Position numbers and translations under genes: made by a program. The notes below the pieces were generated by a model that saw nothing but the letters and a program-made list of their open reading frames with translations, made no database searches and was not told the origin of the DNA. A DNA stretch of 64,000 bases, taken from Trichosphaerium sp. ATCC 40318. Its lineage: Eukaryota; Protista; Tubulinea. How positions within the stretch are numbered: position 1 is the first letter of the stretch; every line of letters begins with the position of its first letter. Location of the stretch: positions 62,001 to 126,000 of the forward strand of contig JALMLS010000531.1 in NCBI GenBank assembly GCA_038496445.1, read 5' to 3'. This document shows, in pieces, positions 51,438-57,464 of this stretch.

Positions 51438-51876
51438 CAATTTTCATTTGTAGTCAAAAAAAAAAATAAAAAACAAGCTGAAAGCTAGAATTGACACTTG
51501 TGACGCACCATTAGTTCCAATAGTTTGGCGTAGAGTTGCTTTCACAATCTTGAAGTTACAAAGCACGTGTAGGAAAGTAGTTGCAAGACTTTGTTATCAT
51601 TTCAAAGTAACCAATTACTTAGCTTGCAAGATTTTGCATGGGTTTGTGGCGGTAAAAATATACTTGGCGCCACTTTCCCAATGAAATTATATTACTTCAA
51701 CCAATAAAAAGGAGTACTCATAAGCACTTGAGAGACAAGACCGAAATAAGAAAGTGTACAATTCATGACATACGACGATATTATTGACACTATTAAATTG
51801 ACAAACAAGAGACCAGGAATTATAAGCAACGATGGGTATATTTTTTTGTTTAATGGGTAACATTTTTTTAAGTACA

Positions 51877-53096
51877 CTAACCGTCGCGACCGGTGTAGAT
51901 TTGTTTTGTACCTCTGAGCAAACCGGTTCTTCTGGCAGCAATGTGACCGACTTTTCTACCAGGACAGGTATCTCTAGCAATAGTCGAAGCTTTACCAATA
52001 TGCTGGTGATTACCTAAAAAAAAATAAGCACCAAGTCAAAGAACATACAAAAACCTCCAAATTTCAAAAAAATCCCGCGAAACAAGTTCAAAAAAAAATT
52101 CAGAACAATATACGTACCACCACCATGTGGATGGTCGACGGCGTTCATAGCAACACCACGAACAACAGGCCAAGCTTTTCGCAATTTGCGGAATTTCCAG
52201 AAAGCGTTACCAGCCTTGAGCATAGGCTTTTCGATACGTCCACCACCAGAGATGATTCCGATCATAGCACGGCATTTAGAATGTACAAACTTTTTTTTGC
52301 CTGTAAAGGTGATGAGCAAAAGAAAGCGAAACGATCAAAAAGCGAAAGTTTTTTTTTCTGGTTTTTCCAGCGTGTACTTACCGGAAGGCATCTTCAATAG
52401 TGTCTTTCCGTCTTCTGTGTGCTGAATTATGCTACAAAACCTACCAGATGCTCTGGCAAGACGACCTTTTCGAAACAAGTCAGAAAAAATATTATTGATT
52501 GCTTGTATGCGTTTGTATACGACGAGAGCGTAGTTATACGCGTTTTTTGTGAATACAAGTAAAAAATAGAGATGACGCACCTTTATCGCCGAGATGACGC
52601 TCTACGTTGCATACGATAGCACCTTCTGGGATACGGTACAATGGCAAGATGTTACCAACAGCGATTTGAGCTATTGAGAAAGTAAATTTCTCAGTTACGC
52701 TATTTAGTGTGTATAATACGTACCGTTTCTTCCAGCGTACACGAATTGACCTGTGTACATACCCTCAGTAGCGAGAATGTATTGGGTGTCTTTAGCCAAG
52801 CGATACGCATTGCGAAATTGAACCTTAGCAACTGGAGCACCTCTACCGGACTCATGGATGATATCTTTGACAACACCACGGATGAACCCTTTGCGCTCAA
52901 CGTAATCGACTTTTCTGAATTGAGGCCTAGTTCCTAGTCTGTGAAAGTTTCTAGACTATTGGCAATGGGTTAGAGCCTGAGAAAAAGCGATGAAACCATA
53001 CCGTGTAGATGTTACCACGCCCCTTTCTTTGACCTGAAACGCGTGTAAATCGATTGCATTAGCGTATATATACGTACTCCTAATGTTTTTACCCAT
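51877..53096 (-). CDS. RPL8: 60S ribosomal protein L8 (uL2), multi-exon
   Basis: [53 protein letters not shown]. Confidence 0.97.
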
Positions 53097-53272
53097 GCTG
53101 CCAAGGCGATGTTTTACTAAAAATTGGGCCTAAAAAATAAAAAGTGAAGAAAGTCCACTAAAAGTCAAAAGAATTTTCGCGACCAAGTTACAGAATAGCT
53201 TCTGTGAGAATTTGAGGCTCAAGCGTTACAACACTTCTTCGAACGTTACACTTTACAATACGCTCATACGTC

Positions 53273-55526
53273 ATGGAACCAAAAGAAACACGCGACCCTG
53301 CAGAATGTAGCCCTTCAACTACAATTCCCAATTTCCTCAAGCAATATTACGAAACAAGTACTTTCCACCATCTATCTGCGTGGCGATTACGCTTTCAGGT
53401 ACTTTTTACGGTTATAAACGTACTTCAGACCAACTTTCTGTAGAACATGACGTCTGAGCTATTAAAGCAGCATACGAAGTCCCAGCGAAGCGTTAATCTC
53501 AACGGGCACTAAAATTACGCTAACATTTTATGTTGACACCTCTCAGATCCACCGAATTTTCATGCAGCGGTTCTTCAGCGTCTGAAGGAGGTTTCGATGA
53601 ATCTTTCGATTCTAGTGACTACGGAAAGGCAATGGAGCTATCAAGTCAAGAAGACCGCATTATTATGCACGTGGATATGGCACGTGCGCCAAACTGATTT
53701 AAACTTTATTAACTTGTGGCTAGGATTGTTTTTATGTGAGCGTTGCAATAAGGGAACAACCAATGCTTGCTGGAAAGGTGCACCAACTTAGTTTTATGAA
53801 TGTTACTGACTTCTATCCATAGCCTGTGGTCATATGTCCCAGTAAGAATATCAAGGGCACTTCTGAGATTGCTGCAGCGTCTTATGAGGCTCGTAGTTTG
53901 GGTACATGTCTATAGAGTTTATTGCAATGTATTAATTGTGTTTCAGGTATAAAAGCGCGTATGTTTGTTCGTGACGCACTGAAATTATGCCCAACGTTGA
54001 TTTCTTTACCTTGTGATTTTGAAAAATACGAGAAAGTTTCTGAACAGTTGTACAAGGCAATTATAAATTACTCTCATAAAATAGAAGCTGTACGCTTGAA
54101 GCTTGTTTTAAATTAGTGACATTGTAACAAGGTTTCTGCTGACGAAGCATTGCTGGATATATCTGAGTGGGGTTGGGGCCGTGCTGAGGAGGTAATATAT
54201 TGACCTGTGCATTTGTTTGACAAGCTTAGGTTGGCGCAAAGTTGCGAAAAGAAATCTGGAATGTCACGCATTGTACTATTGTTTTTACTCCTGACAAGAC
54301 GTGTAACAACTAAATTGTTTCTTTACAGGTCCAGCAAGTGTTGGTATAGGACCTAACCCACTTGTGGCAAAATTAGCTAATCGAAAAGCTAAGCCAAACG
54401 GCTTGAAAGGTATGAAGTAGTTTGTGTTTAGATAATTACTTATTCACGTGTAGTCGTTTTCCCAGCAATGTGCCCTTCCTTTGTGATTGGATTTAATATA
54501 ATATCCCTACCTGGTGTAGGTGAAGCTACTGCAAAGAATTTAAAGAAGTATAACGTTTCTACATGCAAAGATCTGCTTGACTTTGGAAAAGCGAAATTGC
54601 AAACATGTGTTGGACAAAAAATGGGCGAAAAATTATTTAACTATGCTTCTGGTGTTGACACCAGACCTTTGCGGTTCATTCACGTGCGCTATTTAAAAAC
54701 CTTATAAAAGGATCTTTATTAAGAGTTTACATAGAAAAGAAAAAGTGTTGGTAGTCAAGTTTCTTGGGGTGTTCGCTTCAAAACTGAACAAGAAGTTTCA
54801 AAGTTTCTTGGAGAGCTTTCAGCAGAAGTCTCTTCAAGACTTCAAAAATTAAAACTTAAAGGTAGTCGTATTCACTTGAAAGTACGTGTTGCCTTGAGTG
54901 ATGCACCTGAACCAGCGAAATATGGTAATCCTGGAAGGCACAATGTAAAATCAAAATCAAAAAAAATGGGAATTGTGACGGATGATGCAAATACACTTGC
55001 ATTATTTACCCGACAAGTATGTAAATTTTTGTTTCCTCCTCTTAGGCATGGTCTTTGTTATTGACTTTATTTTGATAGTTATGGAAGGCTATGGAAATAA
55101 AACCTGTACGTGCAAGAGGTTTTGGTATTGTTGTAGATCAACTTGATAATGAGAAGGAAGAAAAGCAACAAAAGAAAACACCACAAGGTAAAGATTACTT
55201 GAGAAAATTATACATTTTTTATTATTCTCTTTGTCAATTCTTTACAACGGTATCTGTTTGGGTGACAGTTGTATTAATGCCTTGTAGCGAATCAACTCAC
55301 TCAGTATTTTGAAAAGAAGAAGGAATCAGATAATAACGTATTTAAATCTTGGTCAAAGAAGCCAAAAGCAAAACCAAAAGAGAAAAACAAAACACAAACA
55401 CTTACAAACTTTTTTCAAGTTGTAAAGAGGAAACGTGATCATGATCAACCTCAAAAACAAATAGATAACCAACCGCCCAAAAAGAAACTAAAGACAACCA
55501 CACCTGAGAAAGACAACCAAAAGTAA
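53273..55526 (+). CDS. Y-family DNA polymerase, Rev1-like catalytic core (atypical), multi-exon
   Basis: N-digit-like YYETSTFHHLSAWR, MHVDMDCFY, IAAASYEARSLGI, VSADE, LPGVG, RKSVGSQVSWGVRF; C-terminal PIP-like QTLTNFF. Confidence 0.88.
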
Positions 55527-55643: not shown

Positions 55644-57464
55644 TTATGTAGATGGTACTGACGTATCTTCCCCGTTTTCTGGAGCTGTTTTAGGTACATC
55701 CGAGCCTCTGGTGGTGGGTGGTACTGAAGTATCCTCTCCGTTTTCTGGAATTGAATCCTCTCCATCCTCTGGAGCTGCTTTAGGTTCATCATCAGGAACC
55801 TCTGGCGTTGTAGGCAATACTGATGTATCCTCTCCGTTTTCTGGAGCTGCTTTAGGTTCATCAGCAGGAGCCTCTGCCGTTGTAGGCAATACTGATGTAT
55901 CCTCTTCGTTTTCTGGAATTGAATCCTCTCCATCCTCTGGAGCTGTTTTAGGTTCATCAGAAACCTCTGGTGTTGCAGATGCTGATGTATCTTCCTTGTT
56001 TTCTGGAATTGGCTCCTCTCCATTCTCTGGAACTGTTTTGGGTACATCAGGAACCTCTGGTGTTGATGTATCCTCCCCGTTTTCTGCATCTATTTTAGGT
56101 ACATCAGGGATCTCTGGTGTTGCCGATGGCGCTGATACATCATTCCCATTCTCCGTAACTTTTATGTCAGAAGTCTCTGGTGTTGTAGGCGGTGTTGATG
56201 TATCCTGGGCAGTTTCTGGAGCTGTTTTAGGTACGTCAGTAACCTCTGGTGTTGCAGGTGCTGATATATCCTCCTTGTTTTCTGGAATTGGGTCCTCTCC
56301 ATTCTCTGGAACTGTTTTAGGTACATCAGTAACCTCTGGTGTTGTAGATGCTGATGTATCTTCTTTGTTTTCGGTTTTAGGCGCATTAGGCGTATCCGGT
56401 GTAGGTACTGATGTATCCTTCCCATTTTTTGGAACTGTTTTAGGTACATCAGGAGTCTTACTAAAAATGTTCGAGTTTGCCATTCTCACAATAAACGGAG
56501 ATGGCACTTCACTGCTTTTTTTCCTCCTTTTAGGACCACGTTGTACAGTTTTTTCAGTCTTGGTACAATACATCAGTACCAAGAATGAAGTGAGGTAGAG
56601 TGACTACAATGTTAAAGGTACGTACATAAAGTTGTTCATAATGTTTAATGATATCTATTATTAATTCTCTACTAGAAACCTCGTCACCTTGCATATAGTA
56701 TTGTTCTATATTAGGTCGACAAAAATATTGCATTAGCAACTTTGCTAAAGTTTTAATATCAGATCCTCCTCCTGCATTAATCTCGTGAAGTAGGAATAAA
56801 AGCTGCTTTAGGACCATTTGATTTTTTGTCTTTAATTTTTTGAATATCTTCTTATATGTATTAATCCGTTGAGCTTCGTCTTTAAGCACTATTTATAGTA
56901 AAGGAAGAAAATCAATTTCAAAAAAAAACAAAAAAAACGTGACATTTCTTGACACATTGTGTCGGAATAAGGATACTGGATGTAAGTATGAGTAAATCGT
57001 AGTTATCATATTCTAGAAGAGGATGTGGAAGGATTTTGAGATGTTCTAGGCAGTGTAAGTTTCTTACAAAGAGTGTCAAATGATTGTTTGTAAACCAAGG
57101 GACTGTACGCACCAATTATAGCGTCAGCTACCACGTTGTTATTAACTTTGTCGGATAGGCGTATTTTTCCACCTTCTATGTTGAGATAATTAGTGTCCTG
57201 CTCGTAATAGCGCGGGTGTACCTGTTTTGAGCTTTCGAGAGAGCCCTACAAGCGCTTTTGAACTTCCTTTTTTTGTGAACAGGTCAGGGTGGCTGACACC
57301 TAATAATAGAGCGTAAGAGGACATTGTTGTAACTATCAGCAAACAAATACAAAGGTAGACAATTACAATTAGTTTTCGCCACGTTGTGTGCACTTACCGT
57401 GCTTAATGAGGTGCTCTATAAGCTTTATAATAACTTTGTAAGTGTCTGCGTGGTTTGAAGCCAT
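55644..57464 (-). CDS. RhoGAP-like domain protein with long acidic Pro/Thr/Glu tandem-repeat tail
   Basis: LIEHLIKHG...DLFTKKGS, VADAIIEHLKILPHPLL, NQMVLKQLLFLLHEI; tail repeats ENGEDTS...TPEVPDVPKT. Confidence 0.7.
55650..56460 (-). repeat. Degenerate coding tandem repeat (ENGEDTS/PEVPDVPKT units)
   Basis: Recurrent ctgatgtatcctc and tctggagctg(c/t)tttaggt blocks. Confidence 0.85.
56889..56976 (-). other. U12-type GT-AG intron in the RhoGAP-like gene
   Basis: Donor GTATCCTTA; branch-like TTCCTTTAC followed by 9 nt ending in AG; joins LTS|MLKDE in frame. Confidence 0.8.

What the first reader, a model, noticed from the sequence alone, without database searches (positions are those of the whole stretch)
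53273..55526. Rev1-like polymerase lacking the protein-template arginine and BRCT but carrying a PIP box
Seen: the N-digit reads STFHHLSAW (53357-53383) where yeast Rev1 has SRLHHLSAW. The catalytic DMD and DE residues are intact. The ATG lies only about 176 bp from the divergent RPL8 start, leaving no room for a BRCT domain. The short C-terminus shows no obvious Rev1 CTD but contains TQTLTNFF, similar to the Pol eta PIP box MQTLESFF. Known: Rev1 Arg324 pairs with the incoming dCTP and Leu325 evicts the template base, which makes Rev1 a dCMP transferase. Inference: a Rev1-derived enzyme with altered nucleotide selection (Thr-Phe), recruited directly by PCNA.
Basis: partly seen in the sequence, partly recalled or inferred. 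Interest (0 to 1): 0.75.

Follow-up and report, generated by a model that had tools for sequence, protein, structure and literature searches.

The report
Rev1 polymerase without its template arginine
This amoeba expresses a stripped-down relative of the DNA-damage-bypass enzyme Rev1 in which the arginine that normally stands in for the DNA template is replaced by threonine-phenylalanine, and the same replacement is conserved in distant amoebae, so it is a working variant rather than a decaying gene.

Summary
Spliced cDNA contigs support a 13-exon gene (53273-55526, +) for a 546-aa Y-family polymerase. The N-digit reads STFHHLSAW where 269 of 275 Rev1 proteins collected here read SRL. The catalytic DMD and SADEA residues are intact.

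- **No BRCT exon:** the cDNA 5' end lies at 53204, and the leader has an in-frame stop and no ATG.
- **Rev1 lineage:** the N-digit and little-finger exons match only Rev1 in the PDB.
- **Conserved subfamily:** the gene belongs to a monophyletic group (100/99 support) seen in Echinamoeba, Amoeba proteus, Copromyxa, Mastigamoeba, Mastigella, Physarum and unnamed samples.
- **STF is conserved:** two members only 37-41% identical to this protein also carry STFHH. Others have lost the N-digit.
- **Other shared changes:**
  - no BRCT, UBM or CTD;
  - steric gate Phe to Tyr;
  - a new fingers Arg;
  - an NPG loop that puts Pro where yeast M685's backbone amide holds the evicted G;
  - two conserved PIP-like motifs.

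I read it as a PCNA-tethered bypass polymerase that no longer uses arginine-templated dCMP insertion. Nucleotide choice, PCNA binding and whether a canonical REV1 also exists in this genome are untested. I found no paper describing this variant.

The parts
53204..53272 (+). 5' untranslated leader; the mRNA 5' end is at about 53204
   Evidence: X3 cDNA contig record 10 starts at 53204, directly preceded by a template-switch oligo. The leader has no ATG and has an in-frame TGA.
53273..53398 (+). Exon 1 (residues 1-42): short N-terminus and the N-digit helix
   Evidence: cDNA joint 53398/53444. The exon matches only Rev1 chains in the PDB.
53357..53383 (+). N-digit core STFHHLSAW; Thr30 and Phe31 sit at the positions of yeast Rev1 R324 and L325
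   Evidence: cDNA covers it with 0 differences.
53444..53505 (+). Exon 2, ended by a GC-AG intron (53506-53546)
   Evidence: cDNA joint 53504/53546 with 1 ambiguous base. The frame is verified.
53547..53679 (+). Exon 3, acidic and Ser-rich linker ending in HVDM (first catalytic Asp106); followed by a GC-AG intron (53680-53723)
   Evidence: cDNA joint.
53724..53777 (+). Exon 4: Asp108 and the steric gate Tyr111 (DCFYVSV)
   Evidence: Canonical Rev1 has Phe here in 36 of 36 sequences; the subfamily has Tyr in 8 of 8.
53823..53901 (+). Exon 5 (fingers; includes the subfamily-specific Pro131)
   Evidence: cDNA joints.
53947..54089 (+). Exon 6 (fingers and palm); IKARM with the subfamily-specific Arg156 at 53949-53963
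   Evidence: Pfam IMS 2.7e-08. It aligns to human REV1 IKNGMF, and Arg156 aligns to Dpo4 position 58. Canonical Gly in 32 of 36 sequences; subfamily Arg in 8 of 8.
54132..54191 (+). Exon 7: VSADEA with catalytic Asp203 and Glu204
   Evidence: cDNA joints.
54230..54272 (+). Exon 8 (palm)
   Evidence: cDNA joints 54191/54230 and 54272/54329.
54329..54409 (+). Exon 9 (palm, KAKPNG)
   Evidence: cDNA joints, one also seen in run X1.
54454..54683 (+). Exon 10: thumb with helix-hairpin-helix
   Evidence: Pfam IMS_HHH_1 1.4e-16. The best PDB match is human REV1, 3.6e-08.
54735..55016 (+). Exon 11: little finger; altered G-loop KYGNPGRHN at 54918-54944
   Evidence: Pfam IMS_C 1.8e-11. Only Rev1 matches in the PDB. 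Pro403 aligns with yeast M685.
55079..55187 (+). Exon 12: end of the little finger and start of the basic tail
   Evidence: GT-AG borders, reading frame and homology. The 55016/55079 joint was not among the joints listed.
55288..55526 (+). Exon 13: Lys-rich tail up to the stop codon. It holds PIP-like motif A ANQLTQYF (spans the 55187/55288 junction to 55310), motif B TQTLTNFF (55392-55415), and the basic clusters KRKR and PKKKLK.
   Evidence: The X2 cDNA contig joins 55185 to 55286. Both motifs are conserved in relatives.

Best explanation
The gene encodes an expressed, probably active Y-family DNA polymerase of the Rev1 lineage. It belongs to a conserved amoeba subfamily that kept the Rev1 catalytic core and rebuilt everything that makes Rev1 special.

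**What was lost.** The scaffold modules are gone: no BRCT, UBM or C-terminal domain.

**What changed around the template site.**
- N-digit Arg to Thr and Leu to Phe.
- Little-finger loop GxG to NPG, with Pro at the residue whose backbone amide binds the flipped-out template G in yeast.
- A new Arg in the fingers, at a position that lies over the nascent base pair in Dpo4.
- Steric gate Phe to Tyr.

**What was added.** A short, Lys-rich, probably disordered tail carries two conserved PIP-like motifs.

**Shown here:** gene structure, expression, the residues, their conservation and lineage membership.

**Inferred:** the enzyme is tethered to PCNA like Pol eta or Pol kappa, and does not act as a scaffold. 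It no longer selects dCTP by an arginine protein template. Most likely it reads the DNA template conventionally or uses another, still unknown rule. Sister lineages that lost the whole N-digit but kept the rest suggest that the N-digit is no longer the core of the mechanism.
For: **Gene and expression**
- Spliced cDNA contigs from three studies support the model. The 5' end is at 53204. The ORF is intact at 546 aa.

**Rev1 lineage**
- The N-digit exon and the little-finger exon match only Rev1 in the PDB. The thumb matches human REV1 best.
- The AlphaFold model of the closest STF relative, P0154, matches human REV1 at E 2.6e-43. DinB, Pol eta and Pol kappa come at about 1e-30.

**Subfamily**
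- It is monophyletic at 100/99. It stays so at 96 after the signature columns are removed.
- Named members are Echinamoeba, Amoeba proteus, Copromyxa, Mastigamoeba, Mastigella and Physarum.

**STF is conserved**
- STFHH occurs in P0153 and P0154, which are 37-41% identical overall but 61% identical across the N-digit.
- In P0153's species it is also present in genomic DNA.

**Co-conserved changes**
- F111Y, H131P, G156R, G402N and C406V.
- Pro403 aligns with yeast M685. The M685 amide binds the evicted G (bioRxiv 10.1101/2020.04.10.036236).

**Missing domains and tail motifs**
- No BRCT, UBM or REV1_C in the window exons or in four relatives, whereas Balamuthia Rev1 has a BRCT.
- Two PIP-like motifs recur at matching tail positions.
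Against: - No biochemistry exists. Loss of R324 could make the enzyme poorly active rather than re-specified.
- Thr-Phe is conserved at 61% local identity, which argues that the N-digit still matters where it is kept. That sits uneasily with 'the N-digit is dispensable'.
- The tree has no non-Rev1 outgroup and is unrooted.
- Whether this genome also has a canonical REV1 was not testable. If it does, the tail motifs could be Rev1-interacting motifs rather than PCNA motifs.
- The window protein itself was not folded, because the joined model has no reference. Only a relative about 41% identical was folded.
- The role of Dpo4 G58 in contacting the nascent base pair is from my memory of the literature, not from a tool.
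Confidence: 0.65

Rival explanations
1. It is still a protein-templated transferase. Phe31 keeps evicting the template base as Leu325 does, and another residue takes over as surrogate template, so specificity is kept or moved to another nucleotide. The best candidate is the newly conserved fingers Arg156.
For: - The N-digit helix with Thr-Phe is under clear constraint in three distant species.
- Gly to Arg at position 156 is invariant in the subfamily (8 of 8) against Gly in 32 of 36 canonical sequences.
- Arg156 aligns to Dpo4 position 58.
- The P0154 model predicts the N-digit helices with pLDDT of about 73-84.
Against: - Echinamoeba, Mastigella and Mastigamoeba lack the N-digit yet keep Arg156, NPG and the catalytic residues. 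The shared core therefore works without a wedge.
- Pro at the M685 position removes one of the two amide donors that hold the evicted G.
- No coordinates were available to check whether Arg156 can reach the incoming base.
Confidence: 0.2
2. It is a paralogue that works beside a canonical, scaffold-type REV1 encoded elsewhere in the same genome. The FF/YF motifs in its tail would then be Rev1-interacting motifs that dock on the canonical Rev1 C-terminal domain, as in Pol eta, iota and kappa.
For: - Canonical Rev1 with BRCT exists in Amoebozoa (Balamuthia P0118).
- PIP and Rev1-interacting motifs overlap in sequence (my knowledge).
- The free tree does not join the subfamily directly with Balamuthia.
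Against: - The AU test does not reject subfamily plus Balamuthia as one clade (p 0.236).
- The inner topology splits into a group holding the named Tubulinea (Echinamoeba, Amoeba proteus, Copromyxa) and a group holding the named Evosea (Physarum, Mastigella, Mastigamoeba), as expected for vertical descent of a single orthologue.
- No second, canonical Rev1 from any species that has a subfamily member turned up among the listed hits. Those lists are truncated, so this is weak.
- No other REV1 note exists for this genome, which is also weak.
Confidence: 0.25
3. It is a decaying or catalytically irrelevant remnant of REV1.
For: The residue regarded as essential for Rev1's own chemistry is gone, and all partner-binding domains are gone too.
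Against: - The ORF is intact over 13 exons and the transcripts are correctly spliced.
- Catalytic Asp, Asp and Glu are conserved in every member.
- Subfamily-specific residues are invariant across lineages that are only about 40% identical.
Confidence: 0.05
4. The Thr-Phe reading is an assembly or sequencing error, or the polymerase belongs to another Y-family branch (Pol eta, iota or kappa).
For: None found.
Against: - The cDNA contig is identical over 53204-53396.
- The same STF occurs in two other species, once in genomic DNA.
- The N-digit and little-finger exons hit only Rev1.
- The fold search ranks Rev1 more than ten orders of magnitude ahead of other families.
Confidence: 0.01

Closest known systems
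Canonical REV1 (S. cerevisiae Rev1, human REV1; structures 2AQ4, 3GQC)
   Same: - Same Y-family core with the Rev1-only N-digit helix (NF..YY..S..HHLS.W).
- Rev1-type little finger and thumb, at about 35-40% identity over the core.
- Catalytic Asp, Asp and Glu are present.
- A folded relative superposes best on human REV1.
   Different: - Arg324 to Thr and Leu325 to Phe.
- G-loop GxG(x)CD to NPG, with Pro at the M685 position.
- Fingers Gly to Arg.
- Steric gate Phe to Tyr.
- No BRCT, UBMs or C-terminal polymerase-docking domain.
- 546 aa instead of roughly 1000-1250.
- PIP-like motifs in the tail.
DNA polymerase eta (and kappa, iota): PCNA-tethered Y-family inserters
   Same: - A short disordered C-terminal tail with PIP-like motifs.
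- TQTLTNFF closely resembles the human Pol eta motif MQTLESFF.
- Kappa, iota and Dpo4 also have a Tyr steric gate (my knowledge).
   Different: - The catalytic core is not of the eta, kappa or iota type.
- No UBZ or UBM was detected.
Uncharacterised 'REV1-like' database entries of amoebae (Mastigamoeba balamuthi m51a1_g7235 'putative dna repair protein rev1-like'; JGI 'DNA repair protein REV1' P0268; EukProt transcripts of Echinamoeba, Mastigella, Physarum, Amoeba proteus, Copromyxa)
   Same: They belong to the same subfamily. They share DCFYVSV, IKAR, VSADEA, the K[FY]xNPG loop, the absence of BRCT and CTD, and the tail motifs.
   Different: - Only the JGI/Logan species (P0153 cluster) and P0154 share the STF N-digit.
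- Echinamoeba, Mastigella and Mastigamoeba lack the N-digit.
- None is more than about 46% identical to the window protein.
- I found no paper that analyses them.

Membership tests
REV1 (Y-family deoxycytidyl transferase) | Y-family core: palm with two Asp and one Glu, fingers, thumb, little finger | tested here: met
   Pfam IMS, IMS_HHH_1 and IMS_C on the exons. D106, D108, D203 and E204 are present.
REV1 (Y-family deoxycytidyl transferase) | N-digit helix upstream of the palm (..F..YY..S..HHLS.W) | tested here: met
   Exon 1 matches only Rev1 chains in the PDB. It aligns column for column with 36 canonical Rev1 sequences.
REV1 (Y-family deoxycytidyl transferase) | Protein-template Arg (yeast R324, human R357) followed by the wedge Leu (L325, L358) | tested here: not met
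   Thr30 and Phe31 occupy these positions. SRL is found in 269 of 275 collected sequences.
REV1 (Y-family deoxycytidyl transferase) | G-loop of the little finger whose backbone amides (yeast M685, G686) hold the evicted template G | tested here: not met
   The loop reads KYGNPGRHN. Pro403 aligns with M685 and has no amide hydrogen. Asn402 replaces a Gly found in 36 of 36 canonical sequences.
REV1 (Y-family deoxycytidyl transferase) | N-terminal BRCT domain | tested here: not met
   Only 28 residues precede the N-digit core STFHHLSAW. The cDNA 5' end is at 53204 with an in-frame stop in the leader. Pfam gives no BRCT hit.
REV1 (Y-family deoxycytidyl transferase) | Ubiquitin-binding motifs and the C-terminal domain that binds Rev7 and other polymerases | tested here: not met
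   Exons 12 and 13 give no Pfam UBM or REV1_C hit and no PDB match. The tail is 93 residues, 24 of them Lys.
REV1 (Y-family deoxycytidyl transferase) | Descent from the Rev1 branch of the Y family | tested here: met
   - The little finger hits only Rev1.
- The fold of relative P0154 ranks Rev1 first.
- In the tree it lies among Rev1 sequences, next to Balamuthia Rev1.
- Caveat: the tree has no non-Rev1 outgroup.
REV1 (Y-family deoxycytidyl transferase) | dCMP transferase activity opposite G and abasic sites | not testable with these tools
   This needs primer-extension assays.
PIP-box (PCNA-interacting) proteins | Motif Q/x-x-x-[LIM]-x-x-[FY]-[FYM] in a disordered terminal region, conserved among orthologues | tested here: met
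   ANQLTQYF (468-475) and TQTLTNFF (503-510) are present. Relatives carry QVTLAQMF, QLTISQMF, QTTLFQMM and QMTLTSFF at matching places. The tail of the P0154 model has pLDDT below 50.
PIP-box (PCNA-interacting) proteins | Physical binding to PCNA | not testable with these tools
   This needs a pull-down or ITC experiment.
Pol eta, Pol iota, Pol kappa/DinB | Core sequence and fold closest to that branch | tested here: not met
   These families score far below Rev1 for every exon and in the fold search.

The most novel reading that the evidence does not exclude
In a large part of the Amoebozoa (at least lineages of Tubulinea and Evosea), the only REV1 orthologue has been turned inside out. The scaffold domains thought to be Rev1's essential part were discarded, and the polymerase core was kept. 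The arginine protein template and the evicted-G pocket were replaced by a conserved Thr-Phe, NPG and fingers-Arg arrangement. That arrangement would give a different, so far unknown rule of nucleotide selection, delivered to forks by direct PCNA binding.
Probability: 0.35. Interest if true: 0.8.

Novelty: new variant of a known kind. Interest (0 to 1): 0.66.

Why it matters
Rev1 is the textbook case of a polymerase that uses one of its own amino acids as the template. Genetics in yeast and vertebrates suggests that its scaffold role matters more than its catalysis. This amoeba clade did the opposite. It kept the catalytic core under selection and lost every scaffold module, and it replaced the template arginine, the wedge leucine and the guanine-holding loop in a coordinated, conserved way.

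That gives a natural set of variants for asking three questions:
- What is the N-digit for once the arginine is gone? The set includes forms with the Thr-Phe N-digit and forms with no N-digit at all.
- Can the Rev1 core read DNA conventionally?
- How do organisms organise Pol zeta-dependent bypass without a Rev1 C-terminal domain?

All three can be tested directly with recombinant protein.

Tried and rejected
- **Wrong exon 2 donor.** My first splice model used a weak GT donor at 53478 for exon 2. The cDNA showed the real exon runs to 53505 and ends in a GC-AG intron.
- **Own protein not in the databases.**
  - A whole-library HMMER search with the little-finger exon found no hit above 54% identity.
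  - The profile search listed nothing closer than about 46% identity to the window protein.
  - So no stored id exists for the window protein.
- The joined 546-aa model has no reference. It was used only inside local scripts for BLAST, MAFFT and trees. It was never sent to a database search, to the structure predictor or to the cluster look-up. A relative (P0154) was folded instead.
- **Failed outgroup.** P0132 looked like a possible non-Rev1 outgroup but is a Pol-iota/Rev1 chimera. The trees therefore have no outgroup and no inferred root.
- **Uninformative search.** A region-restricted word search with the STF N-digit of P0154 returned only itself.
- **No second REV1 found, but not excluded.** Looking for a second REV1, or for Pol eta or kappa, in this genome through earlier scan notes found nothing relevant. 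That does not show absence.
- **No amoebozoan canonical Rev1 besides one group.** The search with Balamuthia Rev1 listed only itself and one unnamed relative among the best 120. That list is truncated.
- **Literature.** Three literature searches found no description of a Rev1 that lacks the template arginine or of amoebozoan Rev1 enzymology.
- **Organism identity.** The organism names of the sequencing runs are coded, so I did not establish the species of the window. Earlier notes call it a marine amoeba.
Full report
**Gene structure and expression**

The region is eukaryotic, about 38% G+C, with introns of 38-100 nt. I built a 13-exon model from the three-frame translation and checked it against contigs of three public runs.

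- Run X3 is a cDNA assembly. One contig starts at 53204 directly after a template-switch oligo.
- X3 contigs skip exactly the introns I had drawn, with one exception. Exon 2 runs to 53505 and is followed by a GC-AG intron (53506-53546). A second GC-AG intron is 53680-53723.
- Runs X1 and X2 show two of the same joints.
- The corrected mRNA gives one open frame of 546 codons.
- The 69-nt leader has no ATG and has an in-frame TGA. No upstream BRCT exon can therefore be part of this transcript.
- The neighbour on the other strand is uL2/RPL8 (Pfam Ribosomal_L2_C). Its ATG is 175 bp from this gene's ATG.

**The observation**

- Residues 29-37 read STFHHLSAW (53357-53383). The cDNA contig covering them has no difference from the window.
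- phmmer aligns exon 1 only to Rev1 chains: 'ipnflkqyyetstfhhlsawrlr' against yeast 'DPDFLTSYFAHSRLHHLSAWKAN'. Thr30 and Phe31 therefore sit where R324 and L325 do.
- DMD (106-108) and SADEA (201-205) are intact.
- Pfam finds only IMS, helix-hairpin-helix and IMS_C. It finds no BRCT, UBM or REV1_C. The last exon matches nothing in the PDB.
- TQTLTNFF is at residues 503-510.

**Rev1 lineage**

- The little-finger exon matches only Rev1 in the PDB (human 2e-09, yeast 1.3e-07; nothing else below 0.4).
- The thumb exon matches human REV1 at 3.6e-08, against 5e-04 or worse for DinB and Pol iota.
- The fingers exon matches human REV1 at 4.9e-07, against 2e-03 or worse for others.
- I therefore folded the closest full-length relative, P0154, with a 50-row alignment. 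Mean pLDDT was 78, above 95 over most of the core.
- Foldseek ranks human REV1 first (E 2.6e-43, TM 0.82-0.85 by target), then yeast Rev1. DinB, Pol eta and Pol kappa follow near 1e-30.

**A conserved subfamily**

A whole-library HMMER search with the little-finger exon and a profile word search did not find the window's own protein. They did reveal a set of short Rev1-like proteins.

Cluster look-ups name several members:
- Echinamoeba exundans, Amoeba proteus and Copromyxa protea;
- Mastigamoeba balamuthi and Mastigella eilhardi;
- Physarum polycephalum;
- others from unnamed JGI, Logan and ENA samples.

Two full-length members read the same Thr-Phe:
- P0153 (708 aa) has NSTFHHLSTW;
- P0154 (604 aa) has TSTFHHLSSW;
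- for P0153's species the motif is also in genomic DNA, just after an intron.

These proteins are 37-41% identical to the window protein overall, but 17 of 28 residues identical across the N-digit. Among 275 collected proteins with a recognisable N-digit, 269 read SRL and the other 6 read STF. Thr-Phe is therefore a selected state, not decay.

Echinamoeba (complete ORF), its unnamed relative P0107 and Mastigella have no N-digit at all. Mastigamoeba retains only 'IPNLWPWKEDLL', which looks like the flanks of a deleted N-digit.

**Phylogeny**

An IQ-TREE analysis was run on 47 sequences and 516 columns with the LG+C20 model.
- The subfamily is one group at 100/99. It stays one group at 96 when the N-digit, G-loop and other signature columns are removed.
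- It lies on the side of the tree that holds Balamuthia, opisthokonts, Diphylleia and Gefionella. It sits next to the canonical, BRCT-bearing Rev1 of Balamuthia.
- An AU test does not reject subfamily plus Balamuthia as one clade (p 0.236).
- Inside the subfamily, one group (86/75 support) holds P0154, Physarum, Mastigella and Mastigamoeba. The other (95/96 support) holds the window, P0153, Echinamoeba, Amoeba proteus and Copromyxa.
- STF occurs in both halves, so it is probably ancestral. The presence or absence of the N-digit needs at least two changes on the tree.
- This pattern fits vertical descent of a remodelled REV1 orthologue. There is no outgroup, the root is not inferred, and paralogy is not excluded.

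**What changed together**

Columns where the subfamily is at least 80% conserved on one residue and canonical Rev1 at least 75% conserved on another, in window numbering:

| Position | Subfamily | Canonical Rev1 |
|---|---|---|
| 111 (steric gate) | Tyr, 8/8 | Phe, 36/36 |
| 131 | Pro, 8/8 | His, 33/36 |
| 156 (fingers) | Arg, 8/8 | Gly, 32/36 |
| 344 | Thr, 9/11 | Ala, 27/36 |
| 345 | Gln, 11/11 | Glu, 27/36 |
| 347 | Ser, 11/11 | Asn, 29/36 |
| 402 (G-loop) | Asn, 11/11 | Gly, 36/36 |
| 406 | Val, 10/11 | Cys, 33/36 |

- The alignment to yeast Rev1 puts the Pro of the NPG loop at M685.
[quoted passage not shown] R324 and L325 fill the gap it leaves (bioRxiv 10.1101/2020.04.10.036236). R324 hydrogen-bonds dCTP (PMC9130138).
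- A proline has no amide hydrogen, so one of those two bonds cannot form here.
- Arg156 aligns with human REV1 G in IKNGMF and with Dpo4 position 58. From my own knowledge, not from a tool, Dpo4 A57 and G58 are fingers residues that lie over the nascent base pair.
- Every element of Rev1's protein-template device is thus altered, and altered consistently.

**The tail**

Residues 454-546 are Lys-rich (24 of 93) and carry two motifs that recur in relatives at matching positions.
- Motif A lies about 15 residues after the little finger. The window has ANQLTQYF. Relatives have VNTLTNYF, TNQLTKYF, PNLLTRYF, AAALDRYF, ERKIDSFF and QMTLTSFF.
- Motif B lies near the C-terminus. The window has TQTLTNFF. 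Relatives have QVTLAQMF, QLTISQMF and QTTLFQMM.
- Several fit the PIP consensus Qxx[LIM]xx[FY][FY]. The window's motif B has the Pol eta arrangement.
- The tail of the P0154 model is disordered.
- KRKR and PKKKLK look like nuclear-localisation signals (my inference).

**Interpretation**

Shown: an expressed gene of the Rev1 lineage that lacks the template arginine and all scaffold domains. It belongs to a conserved subfamily with coordinated changes around the template site and conserved PIP-like motifs.

Inferred: it works as a PCNA-tethered inserter rather than as a scaffold, and does not select dCTP through an arginine. I consider DNA-templated insertion most likely, because lineages without any N-digit keep the rest of the signature. 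A new protein-templating rule using Phe31 and Arg156 remains a live rival, because Thr-Phe is so well conserved where the helix is kept.

A review states that Entamoeba histolytica has Rev1 and Rev3 as its lesion-repair polymerases, plus a family A translesion polymerase (PMC10285105). That would fit a Rev1-derived general bypass polymerase in this group. I did not examine the Entamoeba sequence.

**Limits**

- The species is coded. Earlier scan notes call it a marine amoeba. One note likens its mitochondrial RNA editing to 'amoeba BB2'. I tested neither.
- I could not search the rest of the genome for a canonical REV1.
- No tool tests activity or binding.
- The 55016/55079 junction was not among the joints listed. 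It rests on GT-AG borders, reading frame and homology.
- Literature searches found no description of this variant. Database entries label relatives simply as REV1 or rev1-like.

Noticed in passing
window 53506-53546 and 53680-53723: This one gene has two GC-AG introns. Both are confirmed by cDNA contigs. The other ten introns are GT-AG and measure 38-100 nt.
   Followed up: partly
window 55644-56582 (- strand): The convergent neighbour is a long ORF made of Pro/Glu/Thr-rich tandem units (..PENGEDTS..). It is transcribed: an X3 contig covers 55810-56085, with a 3-nt insertion and several substitutions relative to the window, so the repeats look polymorphic.
   Followed up: no
window 51834-53097 (- strand): The uL2/RPL8 gene has seven exons, including a tiny first exon that holds the ATG. 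It is very highly expressed in all three runs. It shares a roughly 100-bp bidirectional promoter region with the Rev1-like gene (RPL8 ATG at 53097, Rev1-like mRNA start at 53204).
   Followed up: partly
protein P0011 (Mastigamoeba balamuthi), residues ~52-70: 'GIPNLWPWKEDLLQSM' resembles the two flanks of the N-digit (IPNF....SAWRLRFQNM) with the core that carries the Arg/Leu positions deleted. This would be a second route to losing the protein template.
   Followed up: no
protein P0132 (405 aa, public collection): Its N-terminal 100 residues match Pol iota or eta, and the rest matches Rev1. It is probably a chimeric gene model or assembly, and it is unusable as an outgroup.
   Followed up: partly
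locus L004 4106-6230 (JGI sample 3300061462, 637-kb contig): In this eukaryotic contig the STF-type Rev1-like gene of another species is split into three 'genes' by a prokaryotic gene caller. This is why its N-digit exon is missing from the called proteins.
   Followed up: partly
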